Positions 7,211 to 56,347 of a stretch of DNA of 64,000 bases are shown here, piece by piece. A program made the position numbers and the translations under genes. Each line of letters starts with the position of its first letter. Position 1 is the stretch's first letter. The notes below the pieces were generated by a model. It was given only the letters and a program-made list of their open reading frames with translations. It searched no databases and had not been told where the DNA came from. The stretch lies in the NCBI GenBank assembly GCA_002269645.1, contig NIVC01000070.1, positions 496,001 through 560,000 on the forward strand. The letters run 5' to 3'. This DNA comes from Macrostomum lignano. Its lineage: Eukaryota.

Positions 7211-10200
7211 ATGAGCAGCAGCAGCTCAGCTCAGAAGTGCTACTACTCGTATGTAGCAACTCGCTGCTTATCGTCATCGACCTTGGCAGATGGCAAGCCG
7301 AAGACGAGCTTGGAGACAGGCGATCTCGTTTTGACCGATTCGCCTCTGTTTAGTAAAGATATTATCAAGGGCAGAAAAGAGTCCACTGGAGAAACTGGAT
7401 CATTCCCTAGCGACGGTCTCAAGCGATGCATTCAGGCTCGGCTACTTCGAGACTTCAACAGGTTGCCAGGTGGCACAAAGGTGTTAATTACCGAGCTGAG
7501 CATCAAACCGCCTGGCTGCTCATTCTACTGCGCCGGGAGCACTTATTCCTTGCCTATTGATAAGTTTGATTTCGGTGAAGCCGATGACCTGGCAATTGCG
7601 ATGCATAATTATTCCGCTTTCGGCGTCGAAATCAAAGCCGGACAAATTGTCTGGACTTTGCGCAGGCCGACTCAGCATCGAAGAAAGTGGCTGGCATATT
7701 TAAACGGCAAAGCAGACTACTTTCCAGAGGAATATGCTCTGTCTTTGAATGAGGTAAGAGCCAGGCAGTCTGATCGTTGGATTTGAGTCAAATCATTTGA
7801 GACTTTAGAGCCTTAAAGTTTAATCGAGAATAACAAAATCGATGAATTTGACACTTGCCTTTTCCTAAAAAGAAAGGCAAACACTGCATTGATAAACTTC
7901 AACTATGTAAAAAACACATTTTGCAGGCCATGAATCAGCTAGTTAAATTTGCCAAGGAAGGAGACTTTGACAGTGTCCGTAAGCTGGCAAATCCGACACT
8001 AATGAAGATGCACGGCTTGCAAGGTCGCACCGTCCTGTTGATGCTAGCAGACGCTGATACTTACGCGAGGCGAACAGCAAAATGCGCTGACTACATGATC
8101 CACTTAGGCTGCAATCCTTCCGCTACGGATTCTAAGGGGGACACAGCCGCACACCTGGCGGCGGGAAACAATAATCTGCAACTCCTCGCTTTGCTAGCGT
8201 TTGAATCGAAGTGGCTGCAGAATTACCAGGGCCTCACGCCTCTCATGGTGGCGGTGGAAGCTGGCAAATGGAGGTGCATTAAACACCTGTTGCATCTCTT
8301 TCGGCAGAACAAATATCATCAATTCAAGACGAAATACCTGAATGAGATGAAGTCCTGTCAAGGTCTGTCAGCTTTGGATATCGCAAAGCGAGCCAAAATT
8401 GAAGAAATGATCGAGTTGTAGGTTGGACTGGCTTATTGACATTTGCAACAGTTTGTCCGATACAGGATTAGACCAGAATTATTACAAACTATTAATTATT
8501 GAAAATTTTAGTGAACTCGGACTTAGACCATCTGCTGGTTGTGATTGGCACATCCCTGTAAGTTAACTCATACAGGGGACGCTTAAAAACAAACATTTTA
8601 CTTTGCTACAGTTTTAGTAAAAACAAAGGCGGTGGCCGGCAGCCCGATACAACGCATTCGGCGACATCATCCCGGCTGAGACAATTCTGCCCATTCGCTG
8701 ACTCCTGAGCAAGAGCACCAATGCTATACGCAGACACGCACTCATACACATGCCCTGACTTTCTAATCATCAAGCATGTACACTCTCTGTGCTTTGGCAG
8801 CTGGCTCTCCTGGGTGTTGAATCGCACGGCAAGCCTCTGGCCAAATTTCCAAATGAATCGAATCAGGGGTCGTGACGCAATAGCCAGACGCGTTTATCAC
8901 TCATCTGCTCTGCCCCTCGTTGCTATTTTAGTTGATGGCTCAAAATTGTACGCAATGCAAAATTTTAGATTTTGTTTTTTTTCTATAAATTTTCAAAATT
9001 TTAAAGTCACAACTTCTTGCCAAGGAGATTAAAACTTCGTTAGAATTGATTAACTGAATGCCATTTTACTCTGCTCACACTCCACTAGGACCATTTGGCC
9101 CAGTTACAAGCTGTTGCTCCTTGCGAGCACCAGCGAACGATCTGCAAGTGCGATGTGCCAGACGAGAAAGGCCGAACCAAGCTGTGGAGAATTTCTAGCG
9201 GAACCGGAGTGTGCAGCGGCATCATGAACGAAGCTATTAGAGCCGATCCAACATGCGCAGATGCTACTGGCAACACCTGCCTACACGCGGCAGTAAACAG
9301 TGGAAATTTAGAAGCCGTGCGTGAGCTCATCGCACTCGACGTCAATGTGAACGCTCCAGCAGAGGACGGATCGACGCCGCTGATGCGCCTAGCCAGTAGC
9401 GACTGCTGCAGTGACTCACAGTCGGTGCAGGTGGCCAAAAAACTACTGGAGAATGATGCTAACTGGAATTTAAGAGACCGAAACGGATGCACTGCTTTGC
9501 AACTGGCTCGGAAAAGCAACAAGCATTCGCTTGTGAAGCTGCTTGAGGAGTAAGATTTGTTAGTTAAGTAGTACTCGTACTAAAGAAATTTCTAAGGCTC
9601 CTAAATCCTAATTAAAGGATGCGTGTAAGACCTTGTTAGTTTCACACTAGAAGCTTAGGTTGATGCCATTATGGAAGTAAAAGTTTGACTTATTTGATCA
9701 TCTGAAGTCTGACTTGTGAAAATACGTTCGTATATTATATATGCATTTAAACTACCTTTCAGATATGAAGGCAAGGATTATTTCGACACAGTTCAGTGAG
9801 TAATTTTTATTTTCACTCTTACGAGTATCCGGACGCCGTTTCAGTTAAGAATTATACATTACGCAATTGTCTGCCGAATTATATACACTAATTCGCTATG
9901 AAAAAACTGGATTTTAGACTTCCTCATAAATCTGAGGGCCCTGCAGCAGCAGAGAATTCCGAGCGCCTGGTATTTACTCCACATTCTGAGAAAAAAGCAC
10001 CACAGAATTTGTCTTCCCTGCACCCAGTCGCCAAATTCGCTCGTCTCCTGCAACAAGGCCAGGGTCTGCCGACGAACACATAAGTGAAGCTGAGTCTTAT
10101 TTGCCTGTAAGAAATCCTGTTCTAGAAAGTTACAATTCGCTCGGACAGACGCAGGTAGCGGTTGCTAGTAGTAACGGGGACAATACGACGCTAAGTAAGT

Positions 10201-12624
10201 TGCGTCAGTCGGTTGACAAAGAAGATCTTAAGCGAGCCGTTAACACGCCAGACAACTCGCTGAAGACGCCTGTGATGCTTGCCGCTTTAAATAATTATCC
10301 GACAACAATAAAGCTTTTGCACGAGATGGGAGCCACCGATCTCAGTCAAGGGGTAAGAGTAGCAGCAAAGTTTAAAATAGCGAATACATGTATTCGGAAT
10401 TAGAACTAACAACAACAACAAAGGCGTTACACAGTCCCCTAGTAAGTCGGTGGAGGGAGCGTCAGATAGGCGCGCCGAAGTGCCAGCGAGAGGACAATGT
10501 CGGGCCCATTGACGGTTTCGGTCGCCCCAGCGTCGCTCAAGATGCAGTCTACGTATCTCCGGGTCCTCGTTTGACCCCGCCTGAACGGTCCTGGCGTATT
10601 GAGCAGCTGCACAGGACGAGGGCAGGAGCTTTTAGCCCCGGATCACGTTGCTTGCCAGTTGGAGATGGTGGAGTTAGAACTAGCAGTATCAATGTCTTAC
10701 GCAGAGGGTCCCAGCACCCCACAAACATTGTAGCGCCCTCATAAAGAAAGCTCGATTTCCACCAATAACGAATGAGAGGAATTTAACTTTTGCCACCCAT
10801 TGGACGTGGTATTCACCAGCCTAGGAGACACAAGTAGGGGCGCCCATCAAGAGACAGAGATGCCAACCCAGGAGATCAAACCCAGACACCAGATGGCAGT
10901 GTAAAATTGATTTTTTGTCAACCTTTTCAGGACCGAGCCAAGCTAACGGCTCTTGCGCACGCGGCTATGCGAGGGAACAAGGACTGCATTGCCGTTCTGC
11001 TCTCTCTGGGCGCAGAGCCTCACACAGAAGACTTTAGCGGTAATACGCCTCTGATCTGGGCGGCTAGAGAAAACCACTTTGATGTAATTGGAAAACTGAG
11101 TGAGGTTCTGCAAAATCTGTCGAATTGGACACATCGTGGCGAGTATAATATGAGCGCGTTGGAGTGGGCGACTTACTTGCAGCATCATAAGATTGCGAAT
11201 TTGATTGTGCTGAGGTAAAGGCTTCTTTCTCTGCTCAAGTTTACCTCTTTACACTTCTTCCGCTTCAAAACTGTATTTGAGTGTACATTTGAAATTATAA
11301 TTTCTTTTCTAGACTTACACACAGTGAGCGTAAAAGCGCACAACTTTTACAGCGCATTTTCTGGTGCAGGCGTCTAGAGATACAGTGTATAGCAGTGTAG
11401 TGGAGAATGAAACTGATTGTCGTAATCTCATTCCAACTAGCGCTATCAAATAAGAAGCACACACTTAAGCCTTTTCGTTTCGCAGTTTTATTTTTATAGT
11501 CTCTTTCTCTCGTGCCTAAGTAACTGCTTTAGGCTATATTCAAGTGGTGTTTTGGCTTAATTGTCTGGCCAAAAAGCTAGGTAATCTCATCATTATACTC
11601 GTAGCTGGTATATCTTTATACGGCATTAAGCATCCATATTCTAAAGAATTCCTAACTACACTACTCACGAGTAGACAGAGCAAATATTCTTTAGATAAAC
11701 ATCGATCCAGCTTTCACAATTTTATAACCGTTGCCTCTGATAACGTAGGATATGAATTTGTCGTCTTTTATGAACATTTATAGCCACTTTTTTAAATCCA
11801 GCATCAACAGCCTCCAAACCGATGCTCGGGCTCAAGAAGCTGCACAGGAAATGCCATCAATTGAGGCTTCTGAAGCAATCAGTGCACAATTACCGCTACC
11901 TGCGCTTCTGCCCAACGACCGATACCGGATGCTGAGCAGGCCGAGCTCAAGAGGCGTTGCCATCATGATAAATAATGTGGATTTTGACAATACAGACAGG
12001 AGAAACGGTGCGATGGCGGACACCCATGAGACAGGACTGTACCAAGCCTTTGTCAAATTGGGATTGCGCGTTGAGACTCACCATAATTTGAGTAGCCACT
12101 TTTTCAACAGCCACAATCTAATCAGCCTAAACAGGCATGAGACAGAGTACGAGCAGCACGATGTGTTCGTGCTCTGCGTTATGAGCCACGGCGAGGACGG
12201 CCACATCATTGGTTCTGATGGTGGGCGAATCGAACTCGAGCCTTTGTTCAACCAGGTGCGCCAGTGCGACAGCCTCGCGGGCAAGCCGAAGATTTTTATA
12301 GTACAGGCCTGTCGCTTGTTGAGTACCTCCCATCCTGCAGAGTCAGCCAATGTCATTCGCGGGCAAGACTGTCTGTATATCTACAGCGCTTGCAGAGGTC
12401 AGCTGTCGGGGCGAGATCCCAACACTGGTTGCATATTTATTCAAGCGCTCAAAGACGAAATCTTGGCCGCCGACCTACGATCTGTCGAGTTCACTCACCT
12501 GCTGCCTAAAGTTGTCAAGCGAGTTCTGGAACTGACTAACGGCGCTCAGGTTGTGAGTTCGGAGACAACTCTTTCTAAGCTGCTGTGCCTTCCACCAACA
12601 CGCGATCTGTTAACCAATCTGTAA
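7211..12624 (+). CDS. SH3-like x3 / ankyrin-repeat / caspase protein, paralog 1 (~1038 aa if one apparent frameshift is corrected)
   Basis: Exons 7211-7753, 7927-8417, 8512-8557, 9089-9549, 9763-9795, 9918-10352, 10931-11214, 11802-12624, all GT-AG with the same phases as paralog 2. SH3 motifs TGETGSFP and KWLAYLNGKADYFPEEY; ankyrin motifs GDTAAHLAA, GLTPLMVAV, GNTCLHAAV, GSTPLM, GNTPLIWAA; caspase SHG and QACR. One extra A is needed in the A6 run at 9991-9996. Confidence 0.85.
11802..12624 (+). CDS. Caspase (peptidase C14A) domain exon of paralog 1
   Basis: RGVAIMINN..RRNGAMAD..VLCVMSHG..LAGKPKIFIVQACR..DCLYIYS..SGRDP..FIQAL..QV..TLSKLL; catalytic His/Cys dyad present. Confidence 0.92.
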
Positions 12625-13696
12625 ACGTCTAAAGTGCCATTTACTCATTTGAGCTCGTATAACTACATGTCCGAGCTATATAGCTTTAAACTTGAATGAC
12701 AGACGACTTCTTAGTTATACGGTCAGCCAGTTTTTTATAAACATGCCATTAACATTGACTGCAGTATTATACTCTGTGATACTTTTTTAAAGTTACTCGT
12801 ACACGAGCGTATATTAATACTTGAAAAATGTTTTATAACAGCAACATTGATATATAGCTACCTCTTGTGGATATCTAATTCTGTTTTTATAAATCTCTGC
12901 ACTAAGAAATCTCACGCGCGCCTCTACAGTATTAAAAACATTTTCGAACATTTTTAAGCGTTGGCATGCCTCGATCTAAAGCGTCATATGGCTTTTACCT
13001 AATGATTGTAAAGTAGTCTGATATGCTCTATATTAATCGTGTGGATAAACGCTGAATTCGCATTGATAGCTTCGATCAGAACAATTTTTTCCGTAGCTAC
13101 TAAAGATTCCCAAGGAAAAATATGGTATTGAGAATTAGACACAGTTAAAGAACTACATTTTCCATCGCTATTTGAAATGCGGGTGTCTGTCTTGGTTCTT
13201 AAAGTTATGTTCGATTTTGTATGCACCAGTAACTGAAATGCATTTGCTACATAAATACGAAAACTATATAGGCATCCATGTAACTTCTCATTCTTTTGAC
13301 ATGAATAGAGAATAGAATACTGAGCACTATACAAAAGTTGTAAAACTTGCACTCTAATTCTGTGTGATGTTGATCCTTTATTTATTTATTTCCAAAGAAA
13401 TGTTTCACTTTTATCTGTTTTCCACAATGAGACTGCAGGCAGCTATATTTATCCAGAAATTTGTTTTGGGACAACAAAGCAAGGAAAAAATCGTACCAAC
13501 TGTCATCCGCTGTGTAAAGTCAGTTTCTTCCTATTTCGGGGCATTCATTTCTTATGCAACTTTTGTGCGATCTCTACGCTTTTATTTTTTATATTGTCAG
13601 GAATTTTTAAGTTGAAATATAATTAAATTCAGTCAGCCATGATTAGAAATACAAAATGCACTTTATTTCTCATATTTATACTGACATTATACTTAC

Positions 13697-16853: not shown

Positions 16854-17782
16854 TGGCGCCCGACTGAATTGAACCCGAGTTATATTCTGCTACTATCGAT
16901 ATTCACCTCGTTCACTACACTGCTTCTGCTTGTGACCCTTCGTTCGGCTCGTTTATCGTCTCGCATCGTATCGATTTCGTTACCTCTGCGTTCGTCCGCT
17001 CGTCTTCGTCGAATCTGCCTTCGTTAACTCTTCTTCTTCTTCTTCTTCTTCTTCTCGCTTTTTGTCGCCTTTCGGCATAGCTCACCGGGAGTCCCTTACT
17101 CCAGCTCTTACGCTTCGCATTGCCGATCTTGTCTCTCTCGCCTGCTCTCTCCGGTGATTCACGATGGTTTTGTTTAAAGAGGTCCCACGGTTCGTTATGC
17201 CGTGGTCACTCTGCCGGGTGCGGTTTTGCCCGCGGGACGTGGTTTTCAAATCACGGCCGCGGGCCTCACCGCCCCCCCCGGTTCCTTATTTGCCAGACTG
17301 GCACGCCAGTCTGCCCGCTTGGCACCAATCGTGGAGGTTGGGAACCATCGCCAAGCGCCTTCGTTAACTCTGCGTTCGTCTGCTCGTCTTCGTCATCGTC
17401 TTTGCTTCTCATCGGGCTCAAGGCTTCAGACTCTGTGCTCACTCCGGATTCAGGACTCAGGACGGACGAACAGGTCAGCTGCCTGGGGAAGTCGATTCGT
17501 CTGCCAGCTAAGTTTTCATTTGGACTGTTTCAGTTGGCTGTTCGAGTTTCCATTAATTTATAATCCTTTCTATTCATTGCGTGTTGTTTGTTTCACTGCT
17601 TTGCTATCAGTCACGTAGTCGTAGATTTTCACTTTGCAATTTTATTCACATTTTCCTAATTCAGTAAAATTTTCGCTTGCTTTGGGTGTGCACTGAGGTT
17701 AGTTGTGGGTCCTACTGCGCTCCTCTCTGAAATCTCTCACTGCTAGCTGGTTGGTTGCTGCTCGTTGCTACTCGAGGTCGTT

Positions 17783-28816: not shown

Positions 28817-31800
28817 ATGGCCAGCAACAGCACGGGCGAACCAGAGGACTGCAGCTACACATACGCGGCAACTCGCTGCCAATCAGCCTCGGCAGATGGG
28901 AGGGTGCTAGCTGTGCAAACAGGTGACCTTATTTGTGCCTGTAACCCGCCTTTATTTGATAGTCCAACAATCCATGGTCGAAACGTATCAACGGGCCAGA
29001 CGGGAATATTTCCCGGCGACTGTCTCATGCGATGCATCCGGGCTAACTTGCGCAGCAACTTTGACCAGCTGCAAGCTGCTGCAGAGGTGCTGATCACTGA
29101 GATCAGAATGCAACAGCCCGGCTGCCCGTTCTACTGCGGCGACAGTTGCTACACCAGGCCAATCGATTGGTTCTATTTTGACTGCGCGGAAGATTTGGCA
29201 GTTGTTGTCCGCGCCTACTCGGCCCGCGAGGAGGACGAGCACAGCCTGGCAGTGAGCCAAGTTCTGTGGATTCTCCACAGGCGTACAAGCGACCTCGGCT
29301 GGTGGCTGGGCGAGTACAACGGAAGAGCGGCTTATGTTCATTGCAGCTGCGTTATGCCACTTGACGAGGTGAGAATTTTGTGCAAAGGGGGACAAATTAT
29401 CGTACTTATTCGTGCTTTGTCCTCCCGCCTTAGGTGGTTCAAATTCACTGCAAGACATCAATGTTACTTCTATACTTAAGCAAAGGCTCATAAAGTTAAA
29501 AAACTCCTTAACGAAGTTAAGCTAAGGAAAAGTGTTTTCCTGGCCCTACAAAAGGAAAAGCGGTCGCTCGTCCATTTCACTATCGGTAGACGCACTATGA
29601 AATCTATAATTAGATACGCACAACAATGATAAATCTGATAATATAACACTTCAAACTTCCCCAATAAGGCTGATATTGAATTGGTATGAATGATGGGCAT
29701 GTGGGAGATTGCCACAGGTCACAAAAAGGATAATTGAAGTGGGAAGTTCGATGCAGTTTAAATGCTAAGGGACGCAAAATCTCGTAGGAGCGATCACAAG
29801 TTTGAGCTTTATGATTCCCGTGCGACTAATTTAATCTCGCGATTGACAATTTCCTTGAGCGTCACCAGCAGCACCTCCTGCACCGGCTGTGTGCAGTACA
29901 ACTGCTAGATGGAGTCGCCGACAGCGCAACAGATTGCTTGAGCAGACCAGTGCTTCGTTGGTGACTTTTCAATTATTTTTCAAATGTGAAGTGTAAAGGC
30001 TTATTAAGTGGCTGGGGCGATGGCACCCCGTAACCACAGCGTCCATGAATTTTGCTTAATGATAAGTGTATTTTATGTACTTTAAACTACCAGATCCAGA
30101 CGCTGCTCGCCCAGTGGGCCATGCAAGGTGATTTCGAGGCAATTCGGGCTATTGTCACACCCGAGCTCATGCGGTTTTACGGTAAGAATGGTCAGACGGT
30201 CTTGATGCTGGCGGCGACATTCGGCGCTCTGCAGTCAAAGGCCTCGGCTGCCAAGTGCGTAGGCTATTTGATTCACAGCGGCTGCGATCCTCGAGCAAGC
30301 GAAACTTCGGGCAATACGGCCGCGCACATGGCAGCCGCTCTCGATAATTTACAACTACTGGCGCTGATACCGTTTGAAGCGAAGTGGCTACTCAATAGCC
30401 TGGGTTTCACGCCTCTCATGGTGGCTGCTCAGGCTGGCAGCTGGAGATGCGCCAAGCATCTGCTGCATCTATTGCGCCAGAGCAGATACCACCAACAGCG
30501 TGACAGCTGCATCCACATCAGAGCTGGCGACGGTCGCACAGCGTTGAACATCGCGAAAGATAGCGGCAAGAATGATATCGCGCAGATGATTGAAAAGTAT
30601 GTTTATAGCTTGATTAATCAACTTTACAGTGACATAAAAAAATTCTATTCGACTGCCAACTTGCTACTATTTTAGCGAAATCGGTTTTAATTATGCCGGA
30701 CCCCGCTCAATCTTCTTGGAGCACACAGTAAGACTCACATCGTTTAACTATGCAGTTTAACAGAGTTCAGAAATACGACTTTGTTCCTTCAAAGCTCAGT
30801 CAAACTTCTATCAGCTGATTTATCATATCACTCAACTGATGTACTAAGCAACAAGTATATGAAGGTCATCGATCGCGTAAACATTAATCTCTAATTTTGC
30901 CTGAAAATATTTGTCACCAGCTTTAAAAGCTCGCTCACAACGCAATCAGATAAGACCAATTTATTGGCGTCGTACGGCTGCACCTACGCTCGTAGTATAT
31001 ACGAGCTATATTTAGTCGCTTTTTACATCAGTCGCGTGATTTGATTGCTCCGATCGATACTACTGTGAATGGGCCTATCACAGCAACTTTTAAAATTACA
31101 CTTACAGCTTGAATACACACGAAAACGGCTCGTAGAATTCGCCAAGACGAGCAAAAATGGCAATCTAAGAGACCTGTTAACGTTGTCAAACTCGGATTTG
31201 CCGGACAGAACCGGCAGAACCGCTCTGTGTATTTTCTCTGAGGGCAAAGAAAACAATAAACATATTGCCCGATCGTTGTTGTCCAACTGCGATCCAACCT
31301 GCGCAGACGTTGGCGGCGGGACCTGCTTGCACGCGGCGATGCTAAGCGGCAACTTGGTAGCCTTGCAGAGCCTCCTTGGCGCTGGCGTAGACGTGAACGC
31401 CTGCACTGAGGACGGGACCACGCCTTTGATGCAAGCGGCCCGCCAAACCGGCTGTGACGACGCTGTGGCTGTGAAAATGTCTCGGCTGTTGCTGCAGTCG
31501 GGCGCAGACTGGACTGCGAGAAACAGCACTGGAAACACGGCGCTGAGTATGGCAAGGGAGAGCCACAAAACTTCTCTGTCTACTCTGCTGCAGCAGTAAG
31601 CTGGCAATGTCCTTTCAATCCTAAATTTAAAATGTGTACATGTATCGTGCCAGCACTTTTATTTATATTCCTTCTATTTTTCAGATACGAAGGCAACAAT
31701 TACTTCGATGTTGTTCAGTAAGAATGTTTTTGAAATATGCCTTATTTACTACAATGGACTGCTAGCAAATACGCTCGTATTCAATAATGTAAGTCAACAA

Positions 31801-34800
31801 TGCTTCCCCGAGTTCCCCCTGTGTTTGATGTCCCTGTGTACGCTCCTGAGGGCCAACCCCTTGAGGCAATGAGTTGCTACTCATGTTGTACGGACCACTG
31901 ACTATAAGAAATTTGTCACCCCTGTGCGTTCGATCCATGTACGTGTAGGTGTTCAGGTGTCAGCGAGCTGAGACGGGTACCTTTTTTGTCTTCTCGCTGG
32001 CTGCGGGTTGACCGTCGCCAGAAGTTGCGCAATTTCCCAAAGCCTTTGAAAATTAACTAACAAATACAATATAGCAACACGGAATGGTTAAGTAAAGAAT
32101 TCGATGAGCAAGGTGCAACATAAAATTTAATTCAAAAAACCGAAACAAAATTTTAGACCAAACGATGAGTCGCTAAAACTGAGCTTCAATGCAACAAGTA
32201 CGGAGAGAAACCTTCAGTCAGCTCAGACGCCCGTTTTGCTAAGACTGGCGGCGAAAAAGCAACAGCCACCTATGAGGCAATTGAGTTCAGGTGATCCACC
32301 GCAAAGGCACATACCCTCGCGAGCGCGTCAGTTGAGAAGACCTAGTAGTGAGATTCCAATCTCATTCGGTGGACCTAGCAGTGACCGGCCGTTGTATTCA
32401 TCGTCGAGAACCCATAAGGACAAAACTTACGTACCTTTTAACTCACAACAACAATGTGTCTTGAAAAAGCCAGATTTTTTTATTGCACCAGATAGTCGAG
32501 AGAACGAGGCGTTTTTGAATCCACAAGTGGCGTCAGACTGTGGTGCATCTTCATCTCCGCGAGTGAGCCATGAAAACGAGGCTTCCAAATTTACGAGCCT
32601 TACCGAAAACTCTTCAGAGCAATCTGGAAACGAGGTGTTTTCAGATTCTCCTGAGCGACCCGGATTTGGGAACGAGGTTTCTTCAGAGGATCCTCCCGAG
32701 CGACCCGAGGTTGGGAACGTTGTGTCTTCAGAGGATCCTCCCGAGCGACCCGAGATTGGGAGCGAGGTGTCTTTAGAGGATCTTTCTGAGCAACCCGAGA
32801 TTGGGAACGAAGTGTCTTCGGATCCTCCTGAGCGACCCGAGATTGGGAACGAGGTGTCTTCGGAGAATTCTCCCGAGCGACCCGAGATTGGGAACGAGGT
32901 GTCTTCGGAGAATTCTCCCGAGCGACCCGAGATTGGGAACGAGGTGTCTTCGGAGGATCCTCCCGAACGACTTGAAATTCGGAAAAAAGCGTCTTTGAAT
33001 CCTCCCGAGCGACCCGAGATTGGGAACGAGGTCTCTTCAGAGGATCCTTCTGAGCGACCTGAGAGTGGAGTAGTGTCTTTAGGCCCATCGGAGCGTCCAG
33101 AGAGTGGAGTGTCTTTAGATTCCACTGAAATTAAGTTATCCCCTAAGCTAATGGAGAGACCTGAGAGTGGAATATCTGTGAACTTGCCTAAAACTAAGTG
33201 TGGCACCTCTTCATCTCAAGAGGAAATTCAAAAAGGCAACGCGACTTCAAGCAAGCTAAAGCGGTCAAGGAGGACGTTGTCTTCAAGAAAAATTGTAGAA
33301 AAGCATTGCTTAGCTGAAGAGTCAAGTGTAAAACAGAGCAAAGATGCAGACTATGAGTCGGATCTAAAACACCAGATTTCCGAAGACTGCATCATGTCTC
33401 TAATCAAAGAGAATAAAGCGAGTTTATCTCTAAATGACTTGAACGAACTGCCACTTATTGCGGCAGCAAAATATGGCGATCCAAACCTTTTGCTCAATCT
33501 GCTAAACCACGGAGCTTCGCTCAATGAAAAGGACACCCTCGGACAATCGCCGATTACAGTAGCTAGTTACTATGGAAAGAGTGAGATTCTTAAAGCCTTG
33601 GAGGGGCGCCGCACTCTGGTTGACGAAGTTAACACGCGGGATAATTCGCTCAAAACTCCACTGATGCATGCCGCTGCTAACGACCATCCGGATGTAGTTG
33701 TGCTATTGCACAATATGGGAGCTGATGTGAACAAAAAGGTGAGTTATAGCTATATTCGTTTATCAAGCCCCCCCCCCCAATACCTGTGTGGCTTCTCAAA
33801 AGCATTGCTGGCATTTTGCTACCAGTACGGCAAGTTAAGCTGAGTCGGTCGCGGCTAGTACGCTAGCGCATTAAACTGAGCTTGAGTCTGTACCTGCTGT
33901 GAGTAGTGATAGCGCAATAACGCGGCCGAGTCTCGCGTCCCTGTATGTGTAGCTGTAGGTTTAGTCCCTGTAGGCTCGATTCCCTGTAGGTGTAGCTGTA
34001 GTTGTAGTCCCTGTAGGTGTAGCTGTAGGTTTAGTCCCTGTAGGCTCGATTCCCTGTAGGTGTAGCTGCAGGTGTAGTCCCTGTAGGTGTAGCTGTAGGT
34101 GTAGTCCCTGTAGGTGTAGCTGTAGGTGTAGTCCCTGTAGGTGTAGCTGTAGGTGTAGTCCCTGTAGGTGTAGCTGTAGGTGTAGTCCCTGTAGGCTCGA
34201 TTCCCTGTAGGTGTAGCTGCAGGTGTAGTCCCTGTAGGTGTAGCTGTAGGTGTAGTCCCTGTAGGTGTAGCTGTAGGTTTAGTCCCTGTAGGCTCGATTC
34301 CCTGTAGGTGTAGCTGCAGGTGTAGTCCCTGTAGGTGTAGCTGTAGGTGTAGTCCCTGTAGGTGTAGCTGTAGGTGTAGTCCCTGTAGGTGTAGCTGTAG
34401 GTGTAGTTCCTGTAGGTGTAGCTGTAGGTTTAGTCCCTGTAGGTGTAGCTGTAGGTGTAGTCCCTGTAGGTGTAGCTGTAGGTGTAGTCCCTGTAGGTTC
34501 GATTCCCTGTAGGTGTAGCTGTAGGTGTAGTCCCTGTAGGCTCGATTCCCTGTAGGTGCGGTCCCAAAAACTTTGGGTTTACAAAAATTGGGCCTGAGAG
34601 CTTTTTGTCTGTTGTTGACCAAGATTCATCGACATTTTATTTGCACATGTCGAACGATCCTCTTAACATCTAATTGCGCCATCCTCAAGCCATTAAATCG
34701 TGGAGATCACCCTTTCACGCTCTTTAGGATCGGTGTGAGCAAACCGCGCTGACCCACGCAGCCATTCAAGGCTCCGACAGGTGCGTCGAAGCTTTGATAA

Positions 34801-37800
34801 AGCTGAAGGCGGAGGCCCACACTGTGGACTATTGCGGCAACACGCCGCTCATCTGGGCGGCCAGAGAGAATCACAGTAGAGTTGTGGTGGCACTCGACCC
34901 GGCCTTGGACCAGCCGGCCTATTGGTCACACCGTGGGGAGTACCACATGTCAGCGTTGCAGTGGGCGGTGTACTTAGGCCATCGGGCCGTTGAGGATACC
35001 ATCAAGCAGTGGTGAGAGTTGATGCGATTAACTACATGTACAACAAGTACAGCAGAAGCGGCCTTGCTTGAGCAATATACAGTTAAACACTACTCCCAAG
35101 AGATTCGTTCACACCATCATCAAATTACGCCAAATTTTGGCAGGATGACTGCCAAATGAAGGATTATACGAGCTAGATGTGCAAGAGCACCTTTTTTGTC
35201 CTCGTTTTGTACATTATTACGTTAGTTCTGTAATTCGATGGCTAATTTGGTAGCGGTGTAAACAAGCCTCCAACGAAACGTCCGAGAAAACGTTTTCGCT
35301 CGAAGCCATTTACTTAGTGTAGAATAGCGTCAAAACTTTGGTGCGCTTGAAGTTATACAAGATAGAAGAAAATGCAATGCCTTCGCTCGAGCGTATAGCT
35401 GCGGTCTCTAGGCATATATGAAAGGCACAATAGATGGAATAAACTTTTGTTAAAACGGTATTCAGGCAATAACTATGAAAGAATTGGCATCTTCATAGCA
35501 TGCTACGAGCTAGTTCTCGCAACACTGGTTTTACGAGCAAACTGTCCATACCTCTCGAATATTATACAATAGAACTTTTCTCAAAGACTAGCGCTTTAGA
35601 CTGAAATTTTGTTCTATGCATACCAAAGCTGTCTTAATTTCGAATGGCTGGCTAAGCACTGAGGCGTTAAGGCCAGCAGCTGTATATGGTACTTCAAATA
35701 CTCGTCGTCGTCATTTTCTTTATGCGGTAAAATAGTGAGCAGAAAACTGCCTATAGTCTTTGCTCCGCAGCTAAAACTATACAGCACGTATAGCAAAGAG
35801 AAAACAAATGGGCATCGTAAAAAATTCTATTAGAACTTTGTTTAACTGCAATGACTGGGTATTCACCCCGCAAGACGTGGTTCAAAATAAAGCATTAGTT
35901 AAAAAAGCTATATGCTAAATAACGTCAAAGGTCTCAAAATGTAATGCTTCGAAAAGTAAAAGTCCACCTGTTGTGTTCTAGTTGATTGATTAAATTCAAT
36001 TCAGTTGGAGACACTTGAGTCTCGCTCAATATATTTATACTCATGTGCACGTTGAAAACAGTGTTACGCAATCGAAACAACGATACCATGATTGAACGCA
36101 CGATGCATATAAGGTAATTGAACAATTCTAGCCTCAAAGTTAGTTAGTTACAACACCTAGGCCCGATGCACAGTCACTACATTCTCCCCCTTCCGGAAGA
36201 GGATAACGCGCCGGTTGCCGTCGAGCTCGAGTTGACCTTCGAAGTTCAGGTGGAGGTGGCGGCTCGCCCGTCCGTGGGGCGGAGCCGGCGGCAGCGGCAA
36301 ATCGAACCAGTCGTCCTCTTGGTCGGCCGCGCCGTTGTCAGCCGGTGGGCTGTTGCACTTAACCAGCCGACTCGCTTGCCACTTTGTACCGTCGGACAGC
36401 ACGAAGGTGTTGCGCCCTGCTTTGGAGGCGATCTTTAGCGGTTCCTTCAGTCGGGTCGCCAGCTTGTGCGCTCGGTACGGCCTCTGTCGCCAGACCCAGT
36501 CTCCGGCCTGGAGCGTAGAGTCACGAGCCCGCCTTCGCTTGTTGGTGTAGTCGGCGTTCTTGGCTTGCCTCTCAATGATAGCGTCGCGCAGATCGCTGTC
36601 GTCCCGCTGTTGCACTGGAGTTGGCCTGAGCAGCTGCAGTCCGGACCGCAGCTTGCGCCCGATCATCAGCTCGGCTGGAGTCAGCCCGGTGAGAGCGTGC
36701 TGGCTGGTCCTGTAGGTCTTGAGCACCAGGTCGATGGCGTCCTCGAACTTCGCTCCCGCCCTCAGGTTCGCTGCCAGGCCCTCCTTCAGACTCCGGTTGA
36801 ATCGCTCAACTCCGCCGTTGCCTTGCGGGTAGTACCGGCTCACTCGGCTGTGCTTGATGCCCTCGGCTCGCAGGAACTCTTCGAACTCGTCGCTGACGAA
36901 CTGGGGTCCGTTGTCGCTGATCAGCATCTTCGGGACTCCCCACCGGCCGAATAGCTTCCGAAGCGTCTTGATGATGTTGGCAGAGGTGACGGTTTCCATG
37001 GCTGCAATCTCCGGCCACTTGCTGTACAGGTCGTGGATCACCAGTAGAAACCGCTGGTGTCGAGGAGCCGCGGCGACCTCGCCGAAGATGTCGATCTCGA
37101 CCTTGTCCCACGGTCCATCTGGCCACTCGATTGGTGTCACGATCGTCTGTTGAGGCTTGCCGGACTTCTCCGCCAGAGTGCAGGCCGTGCAGTTCTTGAC
37201 GTAGTCCTCCACCTGCCGGTCAATTCCAGGAAACCAGACCGTGTCGCGGCACCGCTGCTTTGACCGAACGACGCCCGGATGCCCTTCGTGGGCCTCCTCG
37301 ATGACTTGAAGTCGCAGGCTCGTCGGGATGATCGCGCGTTCACCACGACCGAGGCACTGACCGTTGTTCCAGCAGAACAGCTCGTCCCGGACGTTGAAGT
37401 ACGGCTTTAGAGAGCTGTCCACCTTCGTTGGCCAGCCGCCCGAGATGTACTGCAAAACCGCCTGCAGCACTTCGTCCTCCTTGGTCGCCGTTGCCAGTGC
37501 GTCTGCCGTCAGCGTTGTCTTCGAGTCGACGACTGCGTAGACGTAGCCCTCCTCGTCGGTCTCCTCGGCTGGAACGCGCTCCGTCGTGGCCCATCTGGAC
37601 AGCATGTCCGCGCACTTGTTGTCAGCGCCAGGGATGTGCTCAAACCGAACGTCGTAGCCGCGAAGTCTCTCGACCCATCGATGAATGCGAAGAGGCCTGT
37701 GCCCCATGCCTTTCGAGTCGAGCAGAGTTGTCAGGGCCTTGTGGTCGGTGCGCAGCGTTACTCGTCTGCCGTATAGATAGTAGTGCCAGCGTTCGATGCT

Positions 37801-40800
37801 CCATACACAGGCCAGGGCTTCTCGCTCTCCGGCTGAGTATCGCTTTTCCGCTGGGCTGAGTGCTCTCGATGCGAACGCGATTGGCACCTCTTTTTCGTTT
37901 TGTACTTGGCTGAGCACTGCCCCCAGTCCGTCTAGACTTGCATCGCAGGTGACGTACGTCTCAGCTTGGCAGTCAAAATGAGCTAACACTGGGCTGCTGG
38001 TTACGGCTGACTTGAGTGTACGGAAGGCTGTACGTTCCCGCTCACCCCAGTGCCAGTCCGCGTCCTTTTTGAGCAGTTGTCTCAGAGGCTCGGCAATTGC
38101 TGAGTAATGCGGTATGAACTTGTGCAAAAAGTTCACTGCCCGAGAAACGATTGAATTTGCGCGACCGTTGATGGCTCAGGAATTCTTAGAATTGCGTCGA
38201 CGTTGCACTTGGTCGGTTTGATGCCGTCTGCAGAGATGACCAATCCGAAGAAATCCACGCTCGCCTGCCGGAATTTGCACTTCTCTCGATTGAGTGTGAA
38301 GCCTTCGCGATGAATCCGCCCTAGGACTTCTCGGAGGTTCTTGTCGTGCTCAGTCTCGTCCTTGCCGTGCACCAGGATGTCGTCCACGATGTTGATGGCG
38401 CCAGGAGCTCCTCGAAGCACCGTCTGCAGGGCTCGCTGGAAGGCAGCTCCGGAGCTAGATAGCCCGAATGGCACCACGGTGAACTGGTACAGGCCGGCAT
38501 CGGTGATGAAGCACGTCAGTCCTCGAGAGTCTGGATGCAGCGGAATCTGCTGGTAGCCTTGACGCAGGTCCAGCTTGCTGAAGCACTTCGAGCCGTTGAT
38601 GCTGGCCGATAGGTCCTCGATTGACGGTACCGGATAGCGGTCCGCGATCACCGCCTTGTTGACCTGCCGCAGATCCACGCAGAGACGAACCTTGTTGGAC
38701 TCCTTCTTGCGCGTCACGACAACGTTGCTAACCCACTCGGACGCGTCGACCTTCTCAATGATGCCCTGTTGCTCCATCCGGCTGATCTCTGACGTCACTT
38801 CGTCCTTCAGGCCGATCGGCAGCTTCCGCATTGGCTGAGACACTGGCTTGACCGAGGCGTCGATCTTTGTCCGGTGAATGAAGCTCTTGGACCGGCCCAG
38901 ACCGTCGAAGATTCCGGGGAAGTCGCGCTCGATCGTAGTCTCGCTGATGCTCATCACTCTGTTGTCACCTTGGAAGATTTTGAATCCGAGGGCCTGAAAC
39001 AGGTCGCGGCCCAGGATGTTCGCTCCTTTGTCGGCGACGTAGAATGTGGCTTCTGTCCTGATGCCGTTGAACGTCACTGGAAGCTCGACCTTGCCGATGG
39101 TCTTGATCGCAGATCCGCCGTATGCCTCCAGTTTTGTGCTCGTCGGAAGCAGCGGGTGCCTAGCGAAGGACTTCTTGAACGTCTCCATGTTGAGCAACGA
39201 AACGGCGGCACCGCAGTCGATTTGCAGTCGAATCAGCTGTCCGCCCAGACGGCATTCGCAGAATAAGCTGTCTGTGCTCTTGTTGTTCACGGCCAGGACC
39301 GTCAGACTGGACTCTGCAGGCTCTTTGGTGTCGATCGCAGAGACCGCTTTCATGCGGCACATTTTCGCGAAATGGTTCGTCTTGCCGCATCGTCTGCATT
39401 TCTGGCCCATCGCCTTGCATTCGCCCTTGTGTCCGTGGTTGCCTCCGCATCGAGTGCACTTTGGACCTGCTGCTGCGGTCTTCTCATGGCGAGCAGCTGG
39501 CTTCGGCTTCTTGCTCAGCGCCTTCACGTGGAGCTCTGGGCCGCTGACCTGCTTGGCATCTTTGATGGCTGCTTCGATTCGCTCAGCCTTCTTGATGGCG
39601 TCATCTAGCGTCAGATCGTCCTCCTCCATCAGGAGTCTTTCCCTAATGCGAGGTACGCAGGTTTTCTCCACAAGTTGGTCTCGAATCATTTCGTCGTGAA
39701 AGGTGTCAAATTTGCAGTTTGTTGCCAGTTCTCTCAGGGCCATCACGTAGTCTCCGATGCTCCGCCGTCGTGCTGGGCTCGCTGCCGAAAGGCGAAGCGC
39801 TCTGCTATGACGCTTCTCGACGAGCTGAAAATCGCCTTCAGTGCCGTTTTGGTCTCCTGAAGCGACTTGCTTGCATCGACGTTTGCAGCTCGGCGGCGTC
39901 CTTCCTCACCAAGCAGATGCAGGAGGATCGCCTTTTTCCGACTCTCTGATGCCTCTTCGAGAGCTCCAGCTACCAGGAAGTTCTCAAATGACTTGATCCA
40001 CCTTGCCCATGGCACAGGAGGTTCGCCTGGTACTGGTTGAGACTCCGCTGGGTACGGGAGTCCGCTCGTCGCCATTTGTTGTGTTCTAGTTGATTGATTA
40101 AATTCAATTCAGTTGGAGACACTTGAGTCTCGCTCAATATATTTATACTCATGTGCACGTTGAAAACAGTGTTACGCAATCGAAACAACGATACCATGAT
40201 TGAACGCACGATGCATATAAGGTAATTGAACAATTCTAGCCTCAAAGTTAGTTAGTTACAACACCTAGGCCCGATGCACAGTCACTACACCACCCCTGAC
40301 AATGCTGTTGGTCTAGACTCGAAAATTTACTCACGAGTGTAGAATTGTTTCGTAATATTTTCACTAGAGCGGAAATCTACCAGCTCAAATCAAATATTCT
40401 TAAGCAGCGAAAGGGGCTAAAAAGCTAAAAAGTATTTTCGATGATGTGAAGTTTCGAACTTTAAGAGCAAAATCCGCACTCTTGAGGAGTCTCAAACAAT
40501 GTCGACTTGAAATTTCAAACTTTTTGAGAATTTAGGGAGCCTGCGAAGTAAAACATTGCTTAGGAAGTACATGTGATATTGTCAAACAACATCCTCTCAA
40601 AACAGCATTCGCAGACATCAAAGAGACGCTACCGCAGAGTCGGCAGCAGCTGCCGACGACGACGACCACGAAACTTTATCGTCGCCATGGAGCGAGGCGC
40701 TCGAGGCTGCGGACAGCGTAGCTCAACAGCCGACTCTGAGTCCGGTCGATGTTCAGGAGAGATACTGCATGACAGCCAGCTTCCGAGGCGTTGCTATAGT

Positions 40801-41464
40801 GATAAACAACATCGATCCAGAGTGTAACAACTCCGGTTTTAACGAAAGACAAGGCGCCATGGCAGACAGCAGCCAGACCGGACTGTACCAGGGCTTTAAG
40901 CGGCTGGGCCTGTATGTTGAGCTGCACAAGAACACTACTAGCCACTTCATGAAGAAACCCTTGCTAAGCTTAAACAGACCAATATCTGACTATGCACAGC
41001 ACGACGTATTTCTTTTGTGCTTGATGAGCCACGGTGAACATGGCTACATCTGCGGCTCGGATAATAATAAAATTTTATTGGAGTCGTTGTTTGAACAGGT
41101 GCGCGAGTGTCCCGGACTGGCTGGCAAGCCGAAGATCTTCGTCATTCAAGCCTGTCGCGAGGCGGGTACCCAACAGGCGACACCGCGGACTTGCCTACAA
41201 GGCTTGGAAGACTGTCTGTACATCTACAGCACCTCGGAGGGCCTGCCGTCGCACAGAGACCCTAACACTGGTGGCGCATTCGCGCAAGCGCTCAACAAGG
41301 TCATTTTGAGCGCCGATCTAAGGAGCAAAGAGTTCACCCACCTGTTGCCAAAGGTGGTTGACCAGGTTTATCAAGAAACCAACGGACAGCAAGTTGTTGA
41401 ATCGGTAACAACGCTTAGAAAGCTGCTGTACTTTCCAATTAGGGAGTCGCAGAACAGAAACTGA
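28817..41464 (+). CDS. SH3-like x3 / ankyrin-repeat / caspase protein, paralog 2 (1450 aa, open frame)
   Basis: Exons 28817-29368, 30094-30596, 30676-30727, 31108-31595, 31685-31717, 32157-33738, 34728-35011, 40606-41464; total 4353 nt, no stops. SH3 motifs TGQTGIFP and AVVVRAYSAREEDE..GWWLGEYNGR; ankyrins; caspase SHG and QACR. Confidence 0.88.
32630..33120 (+). repeat. Coding tandem repeat (~42-45 bp, SSEDPPERPEIGNEV-like)
   Basis: About 10-11 in-frame acidic/Pro units inside exon 6 of paralog 2; absent from paralog 1. Confidence 0.9.
33939..34557. repeat. Intronic 27-bp minisatellite (CCCTGTAGGTGTAGCTGTAGGTGTAGT) with interspersed Pol III B-boxes
   Basis: Tandem units. GG(C/T)TCGATTCC at 33973, 34043, 34194, 34291, 34496 and 34539. 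Confidence 0.9.
35969..40289 (-). mobile_element. Full-length Ty3/Gypsy (Mag-like) LTR retrotransposon in the last intron of caspase paralog 2
   Basis: Two apparently identical 213-bp LTRs (35969-36181, 40077-40289; TG..CA), TSD CCACC (35964-35968, 40290-40294), PBS TGGCGACGAG (40074-40065), PPT AAGGGGGAGAA. Confidence 0.97.
36157..40075 (-). CDS. Gypsy gag-pol, split by three apparent 1-nt deletions
   Basis: Gag (FRQRAQ..LRELATNCKF, knuckle CRRCGKTNHFAKMC), protease IDCGAAVS, RT (LDLRQGYQQI, VDDI), RNase H (CDAS..AFAS..ERE), integrase (HEGHPG..CTAC, EIDIFG, SDNGPQF, GVERFN). Frame breaks at ~39762, ~38140 and ~36277. Confidence 0.9.
40606..41464 (+). CDS. Caspase (peptidase C14A) domain exon of paralog 2
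   Basis: RGVAIVINN..ERQGAMAD..LLCLMSHG..LAGKPKIFVIQACR..DCLYIYS..SHRDP..FAQAL..TLRKLLYFP. Confidence 0.92.

Positions 41465-56301: not shown

Positions 56302-56347
<46 letters not shown>

What the first reader, a model, noticed from the sequence alone, without database searches (positions are those of the whole stretch)
12286..12420. Both caspases have QACR(L/E) instead of QACxG and a short intersubunit linker with no Asp
Seen: paralog 1 reads QACRLLSTSHPAESANVIRGQD-CLY and paralog 2 reads QACREAGTQQATPRTCLQGLED-CLY (41147-41220). The only Asp is the conserved first residue of the small subunit. Residues matching the S1 pocket (R in RRNG/RQG, Q of QACR, R in SGRD/SHRD) are retained. Known: caspases are usually matured by cleavage after a linker Asp; Dronc cleaves after Glu, and MALT1 works uncleaved. 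Inference: these may be Asp-specific single-chain caspases activated by dimerisation or Glu cleavage. The loss is shared by both paralogs, so it is unlikely to be an error.
Basis: partly seen in the sequence, partly recalled or inferred. Interest (0 to 1): 0.7.

Follow-up and report, generated by a model that had tools for sequence, protein, structure and literature searches.

The report
Flatworm caspases without a cleavable linker
Two neighbouring genes of the free-living flatworm Macrostomum lignano encode ankyrin-repeat caspases that keep a complete catalytic site but have a short inter-subunit linker with no aspartate, so they probably work as uncut single chains, which is a rare, lineage-specific way of switching on a cell-death protease.

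Summary
The window is Macrostomum lignano DNA with two paralogous genes on the + strand, each encoding SH3-like domains, ankyrin repeats and a caspase domain. Each caspase domain lies in one uninterrupted last exon (11802-12624 and 40606-41464). Both keep the catalytic His-Gly and Cys and the Arg/Gln/Arg S1 pocket. They read QACRL and QACRE instead of QACxG. Only 16 residues, none of them Asp, separate the pentapeptide from the invariant Asp before strand beta5. In 107 comparable caspase domains the median linker was 28 residues and 11% of linker residues were Asp.

The trait is not an error. It recurs in an independent assembly and in three further M. lignano genes (QSCRD, QACRH, QSCRQ). The six M. 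lignano sequences placed in the tree form a 100%-bootstrap clade inside the initiator caspases, separate from the published flatworm "ANK caspases". The catalytic core is under purifying selection, while the linker sequence drifts at fixed length.

Best reading: these are Asp-specific, initiator-type caspases that stay single-chain and are switched on by prodomain-driven dimerisation. Cleavage after Glu is not supported, because no Glu is conserved in position. No biochemistry exists. A 2024 survey of lophotrochozoan caspases did not include this clade. I rate it a new variant of a known kind, of moderate interest.

The parts
7211..11215 (+). Gene 1 prodomain exons. An SH3-like N-terminal exon (7211-7756) is followed by ankyrin-repeat exons at about 7924-8253, 9089-9535, 10155-10358 and 10907-11215.
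   Evidence: tblastn of the UniRef model P0005 and the GenBank model P0001 on the window. Pfam Ank families. Donor site CTGAG|GTAAAG at 11215/11216.
11216..11801 (+). Last intron of gene 1 (586 bp, GT..AG, phase 2).
   Evidence: Sequence. The splice reproduces the P0001 junction ...LIVL|SINSLQ.
11802..12624 (+). Gene 1 caspase exon. It holds the prodomain-protease spacer and the whole caspase domain in one uninterrupted reading frame, and ends in a stop codon.
   Evidence: ORF list. Pfam Peptidase_C14 E 1.1e-29. AlphaFold2 model pLDDT 90.2 and Foldseek matches to solved caspases at TM 0.78-0.81.
12001..12003 (+). Gene 1 first S1-pocket Arg (the second R of RRNG, equivalent to caspase-3 R64).
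   Evidence: Invariant column R32 in the 50-caspase alignment. Coordinates.
12187..12192 (+). Gene 1 catalytic His and oxyanion-hole Gly (SHG).
   Evidence: Invariant columns H94 and G95. Coordinates.
12304..12318 (+). Gene 1 active-site pentapeptide QACRL (catalytic Cys at 12310-12312). The fifth residue is Leu instead of the usual Gly.
   Evidence: Gly is found at this position in 85 of 107 comparable domains.
12319..12366 (+). Gene 1 inter-subunit linker LSTSHPAESANVIRGQ: 16 residues, no Asp, one Glu.
   Evidence: The model block covering residues 141-150 has the second-lowest pLDDT (58), as expected for a flexible loop.
12367..12369 (+). Gene 1 invariant Asp immediately before strand beta5 (equivalent to caspase-3 D192).
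   Evidence: Invariant column D154. Asp in 107 of 108 domains.
12412..12414 (+). Gene 1 second S1-pocket Arg (SGRD, equivalent to caspase-3 R207). The residue before it is Gly, where caspase-3 has Trp206.
   Evidence: phmmer alignment to caspase-3. Column statistics.
28817..35011 (+). Gene 2 prodomain exons. The first exon encodes two SH3 domains (28817-29371). Ankyrin-repeat exons follow at about 30106-30546, 31180-31578, within 32236-33843 and at 34728-35011.
   Evidence: tblastn. Pfam SH3_9, SH3_1, SH3_2 and Ank families. Donor site TG|GTGAGA at 35011/35012.
35012..40605 (+). Last intron of gene 2 (about 5.6 kb). It carries an antisense gypsy-like LTR retrotransposon.
   Evidence: Minus-strand ORFs at 36157-38136, 38133-39746 and 39743-40075 whose translations read like retrotransposon pol (reverse transcriptase, integrase) and zinc-knuckle gag; no Pfam scan was run on them. 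Acceptor site cag|C at 40605/40606.
40606..41464 (+). Gene 2 caspase exon, uninterrupted and ending in a stop codon.
   Evidence: Pfam Peptidase_C14 E 2.7e-30. 57% identical to the gene 1 domain.
41147..41161 (+). Gene 2 pentapeptide QACRE (Cys at 41153-41155).
41162..41209 (+). Gene 2 linker AGTQQATPRTCLQGLE: 16 residues, no Asp. It is followed by the invariant Asp at 41210-41212.
41030..41035 (+). Gene 2 catalytic His-Gly. The two S1 Arg codons are at 40847-40849 and 41255-41257.

Best explanation
The two genes encode initiator-type caspases that cleave after Asp and are never matured by cutting between the large and small subunits. A long prodomain (two SH3-like domains plus about ten ankyrin repeats) would bring two molecules together on some partner or scaffold. 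Dimerisation of the single-chain protease domains would then order the active site. The 16-residue linker would serve only as the crossover from the end of strand beta4 (catalytic Cys) to the start of beta5.

Shown: the caspase fold; the intact dyad and S1 pocket; the absence of any Asp in a short linker; the same state in a six-gene M. lignano clade; purifying selection on the core with a freely drifting linker of fixed length.

Inferred: that the enzymes are active, that dimerisation is the trigger, and that the prodomain mediates it.
For: 1. Catalytic competence is conserved. His-Gly, Gln-x-Cys and both S1 Arg are retained in both paralogs and across the clade.

2. Selection acts on the core. 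The caspase exon differs from an independent assembly by 8 synonymous and 3 non-synonymous changes (dN/dS about 0.11, binomial p = 7e-4). Between paralogs the core has dN/dS about 0.2 with dS saturated. The linker has pN 0.66 but identical length.

3. Relatives that lost catalysis show what drift looks like: P0041 reads QANRG, and the first caspase-like domains of P0006 and P0007 read QTHRD and QAEKQ.

4. There is no Asp in the linker of gene 1, gene 2, P0007, P0011 or P0015. Only 2 of the remaining 100 complete domains share that state.

5. The placement is initiator-like. The six M. lignano sequences form a clade (100% NJ bootstrap) inside the CARD/DED/ANK initiator group (100%) and away from the executioners. 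The beta6 motif TL(R/S)KLL(Y/C)(F/L)P resembles the initiator TLRKKLxF (own knowledge). Loop L4 is short, at 7 residues.

6. For initiators, 'dimerization is sufficient for activation' (PMC8628267).

7. The long protein-interaction prodomain was confirmed by Pfam.

8. In other caspases, a non-Gly fifth residue goes with a shorter linker (median 23 versus 29 residues, Mann-Whitney p = 1e-5). This fits a different, shorter path for loop L2.
Against: No biochemical, expression or structural data exist for any member.

[quoted passage not shown] 2013, seen only in the reference lists; the paper itself is not held). That result implies a short uncut linker restrains the active conformation. A linker 10 residues shorter than that of caspase-3 might therefore lock the enzyme off, unless the loop architecture differs.

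The residue equivalent to caspase-3 Trp206 is Gly in gene 1 and His in gene 2, and the pentapeptide Gly is lost. Either change could lower activity or alter specificity.

Two clade members keep Asp in the linker (P0006 LESD, P0031 with five Asp), so cleavage may still be used in the family.

The tree is a rough neighbour-joining tree of 18 sequences.
Confidence: 0.5

Rival explanations
1. The caspases are still matured by a cut in the linker, but at a residue other than Asp. The cut would be made either by themselves after Glu (as Dronc does) or by an unrelated protease.
For: Each linker holds at least one Glu (gene 1 PAE|S; gene 2 GLE|D). Most also hold an Arg (VIR|G, TPR|T). Dronc autoprocessing after Glu is established (own knowledge).
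Against: No Glu, Arg or Lys is conserved in position between the two paralogs or across the clade, and P0015 has no basic residue in its linker at all. The only recurrent Glu lies directly before the invariant Asp at the entrance of beta5, and gene 1 has Gln there. The linker evolves almost neutrally (pN 0.66), which is not expected of a recognition site.
Confidence: 0.15
2. They are regulators rather than working proteases. The short uncleavable linker would hold them permanently in a zymogen-like state, and they would act as scaffolds or as FLIP-like partners of other caspases.
For: Short uncut linkers restrain procaspase-3 (title of MacKenzie et al. 2013). Both the pentapeptide Gly and the Trp206 equivalent are lost. 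The family does produce pseudo-caspase domains.
Against: Every catalytic and S1 residue is retained across paralogs whose synonymous sites are saturated, with core dN/dS about 0.2 and about 0.11 between assemblies. True pseudo-domains in the same family have lost Cys or His.
Confidence: 0.2
3. They are cut after the single remaining Asp (GQD|C, LED|C).
For: It is the only Asp between the catalytic Cys and the small-subunit core.
Against: This Asp is invariant in essentially all caspases (107 of 108 domains). It directly precedes the buried strand beta5 (model strand 155-159). It is not a known maturation site in any caspase (own knowledge).
Confidence: 0.04
4. The feature is an artefact: an assembly error, a pseudogene, or an unrecognised intron or exon.
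For: Nothing found here supports it.
Against: The same sequence is present in a second assembly at 98.7% nucleotide identity with a synonymous excess. Both paralogs keep open frames of equal linker length. Two independent gene models read through. Three further genes share the state. No usable in-frame intron exists in the 48-nt linker.
Confidence: 0.02

Closest known systems
Initiator caspases (caspase-8, -9, -2, -10)
   Same: Long protein-interaction prodomain. Groups with them in the tree. Short L4 loop and a TLRKxL-type beta6 motif. Their zymogens are activated by dimerisation, and cleavage is not strictly required (PMC8628267; own knowledge for caspase-9).
   Different: Those enzymes keep QAC(R/Q/G)G and a 20-35-residue linker with Asp sites that are cut to stabilise the dimer. 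Here the linker is 16 residues and Asp-free, and the prodomain is SH3+ANK rather than CARD or DED.
Flatworm 'ANK caspases' (Casp.Ank; PMC11463336; first noted in Schistosoma)
   Same: An ankyrin-repeat prodomain fused to a caspase domain, in Platyhelminthes.
   Different: Casp.Ank as represented by E. granulosus CDS23854 and M. lignano PAA88208 has the canonical QACRG and a long, Asp-rich linker. These two group together (83%) and apart from the window clade. The paper scored M. lignano as lacking ANK caspases and did not include any member of this clade.
Drosophila Dronc
   Same: An initiator caspase with a non-canonical pentapeptide whose maturation does not use a linker Asp (own knowledge).
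   Different: Dronc has a defined Glu autoprocessing site and a CARD. No conserved Glu exists here. No alignment to Dronc was made.
MALT1 paracaspase and metacaspases (family C14B)
   Same: They work without cleavage between the 'subunits' and are switched on by dimerisation or scaffolding (own knowledge). This is an analogy of mechanism only.
   Different: Paracaspases have an acidic S1 pocket and cleave after Arg. The window proteins keep the basic Arg/Gln/Arg pocket and are sequence- and fold-level caspases.
Engineered or uncleaved procaspase-3 (pseudo-activated V266E; linker-lengthening mutants)
   Same: They show that an uncut caspase chain can be active if the linker lets the active-site loops rearrange (PDB 3ITN appears; paper title cited).
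   Different: In those cases activity came from a longer linker or an interface mutation. Here the linker is shorter than in the wild-type procaspase-3.
[quoted passage not shown]
   Same: A lineage-specific remodelling of the linker that changes how cleavage activation is controlled (abstract).
   Different: The change runs the opposite way: a long linker that inhibits cleavage, in executioner-type enzymes that still have Asp sites.

Membership tests
Caspases (MEROPS C14A, Pfam PF00656) | Sequence match to the family profile above the curated threshold | tested here: met
   Peptidase_C14 scores 104.3 and 106.2 bits against a cut-off of 21.4.
Caspases (MEROPS C14A, Pfam PF00656) | Caspase alpha/beta fold | tested here: met
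   AlphaFold2 model pLDDT 90.2, pTM 0.89. Foldseek top 50 PDB hits are all caspases, probability 1.00, TM 0.74-0.81.
Caspases (MEROPS C14A, Pfam PF00656) | Catalytic His (SHG) and Cys (QAC) dyad | tested here: met
   H94, G95, Q133 and C135 are invariant columns. Coordinates.
Caspases (MEROPS C14A, Pfam PF00656) | Basic S1 pocket (Arg, Gln, Arg) that confers Asp specificity | tested here: met
   R32 is invariant. Q133 and R169 are conserved in the clade. R169 pairs with caspase-3 R207.
Caspases (MEROPS C14A, Pfam PF00656) | Gly as fifth residue of the QACxG pentapeptide (typical, not absolute) | tested here: not met
   Leu and Glu here. Gly in 85 of 107 comparable domains.
Caspases (MEROPS C14A, Pfam PF00656) | Zymogen maturation at an Asp in the inter-subunit linker (typical) | tested here: not met
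   No Asp in either 16-residue linker. Whether any cleavage occurs cannot be tested with these tools.
Initiator-type caspases | Long prodomain with a protein-interaction module | tested here: met
   SH3 and ANK Pfam matches in the upstream exons and exon mapping.
Initiator-type caspases | Phylogenetic grouping with CARD/DED caspases rather than executioners | tested here: met
   NJ tree with 200 bootstraps. The initiator group including the window clade has 100% support. This is a rough method with few taxa.
Initiator-type caspases | Monomeric zymogen activated by induced dimerisation | not testable with these tools
   Requires biochemistry.
Flatworm Casp.Ank clade (PMC11463336) | Ankyrin-repeat prodomain plus caspase domain | tested here: met
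Flatworm Casp.Ank clade (PMC11463336) | Monophyly with the neodermatan ANK caspases | tested here: not met
   The window clade is separate. M. lignano PAA88208 is the sequence that pairs with E. granulosus CDS23854 (83%). PAA88208 is ANK plus Peptidase_C14 by Pfam.
Paracaspases (C14B) | Acidic S1 pocket and Arg specificity | tested here: not met
   The S1 residues are the caspase Arg/Gln/Arg.
Pseudo-caspases (cFLIP-like) | Loss of the catalytic Cys and/or His | tested here: not met
   Both residues are present in both genes. They are lost in relatives P0041 and in the first domains of P0006 and P0007.

The most novel reading that the evidence does not exclude
Macrostomum has evolved a family of true caspases (C14A) that have given up proteolytic maturation altogether. 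These would be natural single-chain caspases with a minimal L2/L4 loop set. They are coupled through ankyrin repeats to interchangeable N-terminal modules (SH3 pairs, protein kinase domains, Mab-21/nucleotidyltransferase-like domains, or a tandem pseudo-caspase). On this reading they act as self-contained sensor-effector proteins, analogous to paracaspases but with Asp specificity.
Probability: 0.3. Interest if true: 0.7.

Novelty: new variant of a known kind. Interest (0 to 1): 0.5.

Why it matters
Caspase regulation is usually taught as cleavage at a linker Asp, with dimerisation added for initiators. A natural clade that keeps the catalytic site but offers no Asp in a very short linker would be a ready-made test of how much of the activation mechanism really depends on cleavage. 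It would also test what the conserved Gly of QACxG is for; here its loss goes with short linkers.

The finding also corrects the current picture of flatworm cell-death genes. Ankyrin-repeat caspases were reported as confined to parasitic flatworms and interpreted as an adaptation to parasitism. The free-living M. lignano has both an orthologue of that type and this second, larger and more divergent ANK-caspase clade.

Tried and rejected
- The profile search with the search for homologous proteins returned ordinary caspase-3/6/7 sequences. It did not return the M. lignano relatives or any Schistosoma ANK caspase, so it was no help for the neodermatan comparison. The comparison sequences came from the supplement of the bioRxiv version of the 2024 paper instead.
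- The first single-sequence search found only P0001 as a close relative. The family was found only by the exhaustive representative search.
- The Mab-21-like N-terminus of P0011 gave no significant hit by sequence against the PDB. Support for it rests on two weak Pfam Mab-21_C matches (21.9 and 24.7 bits against a cut-off of 24.1).
- The MacKenzie et al. 2013 paper on linker lengthening is not held. Only its title could be used.
- A literature search for QACRE, QACQE and similar pentapeptides found nothing relevant.
- Hidden intron or exon: rejected. The frame is continuous, and the only in-frame GT..AG in the gene 1 linker is 18 nt and would delete residues.
- Pseudogene: rejected on dN/dS.
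No sequence of either was retrieved, and they did not appear among the PDB hits that were displayed.
Full report
**What the window is.** The best database match to the gene 1 caspase region is a GenBank protein of Macrostomum lignano, a free-living flatworm. It is 99% identical and annotated as ankyrin repeats plus Peptidase_C14 (P0001). An independent assembly of that species (GCA_002269645.1) carries the same locus at 98% nucleotide identity. The window is eukaryotic DNA with introns and several retrotransposons.

**Gene anatomy.** Two paralogous genes lie on the + strand. I mapped the fuller UniRef model P0005 and the model P0001 onto the window and read the splice sites.
- Gene 1: an SH3-like first exon at 7211-7756; ankyrin-repeat exons up to 11215; a 586-bp phase-2 intron; and a last exon at 11802-12624 that holds the whole caspase domain.
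- Gene 2: a first exon with two SH3 domains from 28817; ankyrin-repeat exons up to 35011; a 5.6-kb phase-2 intron with an antisense gypsy-like retrotransposon; and a last exon at 40606-41464.
- Pfam confirms SH3, Ank and Peptidase_C14.
- The two caspase domains are 57% identical.

- Gene 1 reads QACRL (12304-12318), then LSTSHPAESANVIRGQ, then D-CLYIYS.
- Gene 2 reads QACRE (41147-41161), then AGTQQATPRTCLQGLE, then D-CLYIYS.
- Both linkers are 16 residues long and have no Asp.
- Against human caspase-3 the alignment needs a 10-residue gap exactly here.
- In an alignment of 50 caspases, the first S1 Arg, the His-Gly, the Gln and Cys, and the Asp before beta5 are invariant. The fifth pentapeptide residue is Gly in at least 90% of sequences, and the M. 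lignano sequences are the exceptions.
- The second S1 Arg pairs with caspase-3 R207.
It is the invariant Asp that precedes strand beta5 (Asp in 107 of 108 domains).

**They are real caspases.** An AlphaFold2 model of the gene 1 domain is confident (pLDDT 90.2, pTM 0.89). Confidence dips to 58 in the block that covers the linker. Foldseek against the PDB returns only caspases, at probability 1.00 and TM about 0.8.

**How unusual the linker is.** An exhaustive profile search of 1.84 billion representative proteins gave 5833 caspase-like hits. I aligned the best 150, the P0002-P0004 proteins and the window sequences to one profile. This gave 107 complete domains with His, Cys, the S1 Arg and the pre-beta5 Asp.
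- 85 of them have Gly at position 5.
- The median linker is 28 residues (5th-95th percentile 16-35).
- Asp makes up 11.3% of linker residues outside this clade.
- Only nine domains have an Asp-free linker. Seven of these are gene 1 (three copies of the same sequence), gene 2 and three further M. lignano proteins: P0007 (QSCRD, 17 residues), P0011 (QACRH, 20) and P0015 (QSCRQ, 17).
- Five distinct genes, 86 linker positions and no Asp gives P about 0.008 at the 5.5% Asp content of these exons. It gives about 3e-5 at the frequency typical of caspase linkers (my arithmetic).
- Other short-linker, non-Gly caspases exist, for example in a crinoid and a herring, but they keep Asp.
- Outside the clade, caspases without Gly at position 5 have shorter linkers (median 23 versus 29 residues, Mann-Whitney p = 1e-5). 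This suggests the Gly is tied to the canonical path of loop L2. The test is not corrected for relatedness.

**It is not an artefact.**
- The frame is uninterrupted in both paralogs, and the two linkers have the same length.
- Two independent gene models read straight through.
- The only in-frame GT..AG in the gene 1 linker is 18 nt and would delete residues, not add an Asp.
- Against the second assembly the caspase exon shows 8 synonymous and 3 non-synonymous differences (dN/dS about 0.11, p = 7e-4).
- Between the paralogs the core has dN/dS about 0.2 with synonymous sites saturated. The 17 codons from the fifth pentapeptide residue through the linker are almost fully diverged (pN 0.66), yet the length is unchanged.
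- So the core is constrained. The linker is constrained in length and, apparently, in avoiding Asp, but not otherwise in sequence.

**The family.** All near relatives are from M. lignano. They share ankyrin repeats before the caspase domain but differ at the N-terminus.
- P0006 and P0007 carry a protein kinase domain and an additional degenerate caspase-like domain (QTHRD, QAEKQ).
- P0011 and P0015 carry a weak Mab-21_C match.
- Two members keep Asp in the linker (P0006 LESD, which is also QACRG; fragment P0031). One has lost the Cys (P0041 QANRG).
- In a neighbour-joining tree the six M. lignano sequences form a clade (100%) inside the initiator group (100%) and apart from the executioners.

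**Relation to the published ANK caspases.** A 2024 survey described ankyrin-prodomain caspases as specific to parasitic flatworms and scored M. lignano as lacking them (PMC11463336).
- The supplement to its bioRxiv version contains an E. granulosus ANK caspase with the canonical QACRG and a long Asp-rich linker. It also contains an M. lignano sequence, PAA88208, which Pfam shows to be ANK plus caspase.
- These two pair in my tree (83%), separate from the window clade.
- None of the accessions of the window clade is in that paper's M. lignano list.
- So M. lignano has an orthologue of the parasite-type ANK caspase and also this second, divergent clade, which that survey did not include.

**Mechanism.** I consider a single-chain, dimerisation-activated, Asp-specific initiator-type caspase the most likely reading (confidence about 0.5).
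- For initiators, dimerisation is sufficient for activation (PMC8628267).
- The prodomain is built from interaction modules, and the tree placement and short L4 loop are initiator-like.
- Cleavage after Glu is unlikely because no Glu is conserved in position.
- Cleavage at the remaining Asp is unlikely because that residue is invariant in all caspases and abuts a core strand.
- The main counter-argument is that lengthening the procaspase-3 linker activates the zymogen (title of MacKenzie et al. 2013). A shorter uncut linker might therefore hold the enzyme off. That keeps a regulator or pseudo-zymogen reading alive (about 0.2), although the conserved catalytic residues argue against it.
- All of this remains inference until the proteins are expressed and assayed.

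**Verdict.** It is a new variant of a known kind, of moderate interest.

Noticed in passing
window 7211-12624 and 28817-41464; the bioRxiv supplement of the paper (PMC11463336): Ankyrin-repeat caspases occur in the free-living M. lignano, both as this divergent clade and as PAA88208, which pairs with the E. granulosus ANK caspase. This contradicts the published statement that ANK caspases are restricted to parasitic flatworms and that M. lignano has none.
   Followed up: partly
relatives P0006, P0007, P0011, P0015 (not in the window): Family members carry different N-terminal modules ahead of the ankyrin repeats. P0006 and P0007 have a protein kinase domain plus a degenerate extra caspase-like domain. 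P0011 and P0015 have a weak Mab-21_C match with a GS...DxD nucleotidyltransferase-like motif. This suggests sensor-effector fusions. A PDB sequence search of the Mab-21-like part found nothing.
   Followed up: partly
window 11812-11823 and 40616-40627: Both paralogs have an Asp at the same place eight residues into the caspase exon (SLQTD|A and RHQRD|A). Gene 2 also has a DDDD run. These could be prodomain-removal sites, so Asp sites exist upstream of the protease domain even though none exists in the linker.
   Followed up: no
window 12409-12411 and 41252-41254: The residue before the second S1 Arg is Trp206 in caspase-3 and aromatic in 73 of 108 comparable domains. It is Gly in gene 1 and His in gene 2, and G, D or E in other clade members. 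This hints at an altered S2/S4 wall and an unusual extended specificity.
   Followed up: partly
window 35012-40605: The last intron of gene 2 holds an antisense gypsy-like LTR retrotransposon with long open gag/pol reading frames (36157-38136, 38133-39746, 39743-40075). The homologous intron of gene 1 is only 586 bp.
   Followed up: no
window 32236-33843: A gene 2 exon-sized ORF contains about ten tandem copies of a roughly 13-residue unit (PERPEIGNEVSSE/D) ahead of its ankyrin repeats. Gene 1 has no counterpart. Whether all of it is coding was not checked.
   Followed up: no
window 33855-34622 (- strand): A 255-aa ORF made of simple repeats (LHLQGLHLQ, YTYSYTYRD) has no Pfam match. It is probably a tandem repeat inside a gene 2 intron rather than a gene.
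   Followed up: no
window 13693-15291 (-), 17765-23236 (+): There is a reverse-transcriptase fragment and a 1823-aa Pao/BEL-type retrotransposon polyprotein ORF (Peptidase_A17, RVT_1, integrase). Both lie between the two caspase genes.
   Followed up: partly
window 44204-47687 (-), 61508-62380 (-): Exons of an ABC transporter (ABC_membrane, ABC_tran) and of a protein tyrosine/Ser-Thr kinase lie downstream of gene 2.
   Followed up: partly
window 52001-58000: This region has strongly skewed base composition (AT skew up to 0.37, GC skew down to -0.28), and its long ORFs have no Pfam match. It was not examined.
   Followed up: no
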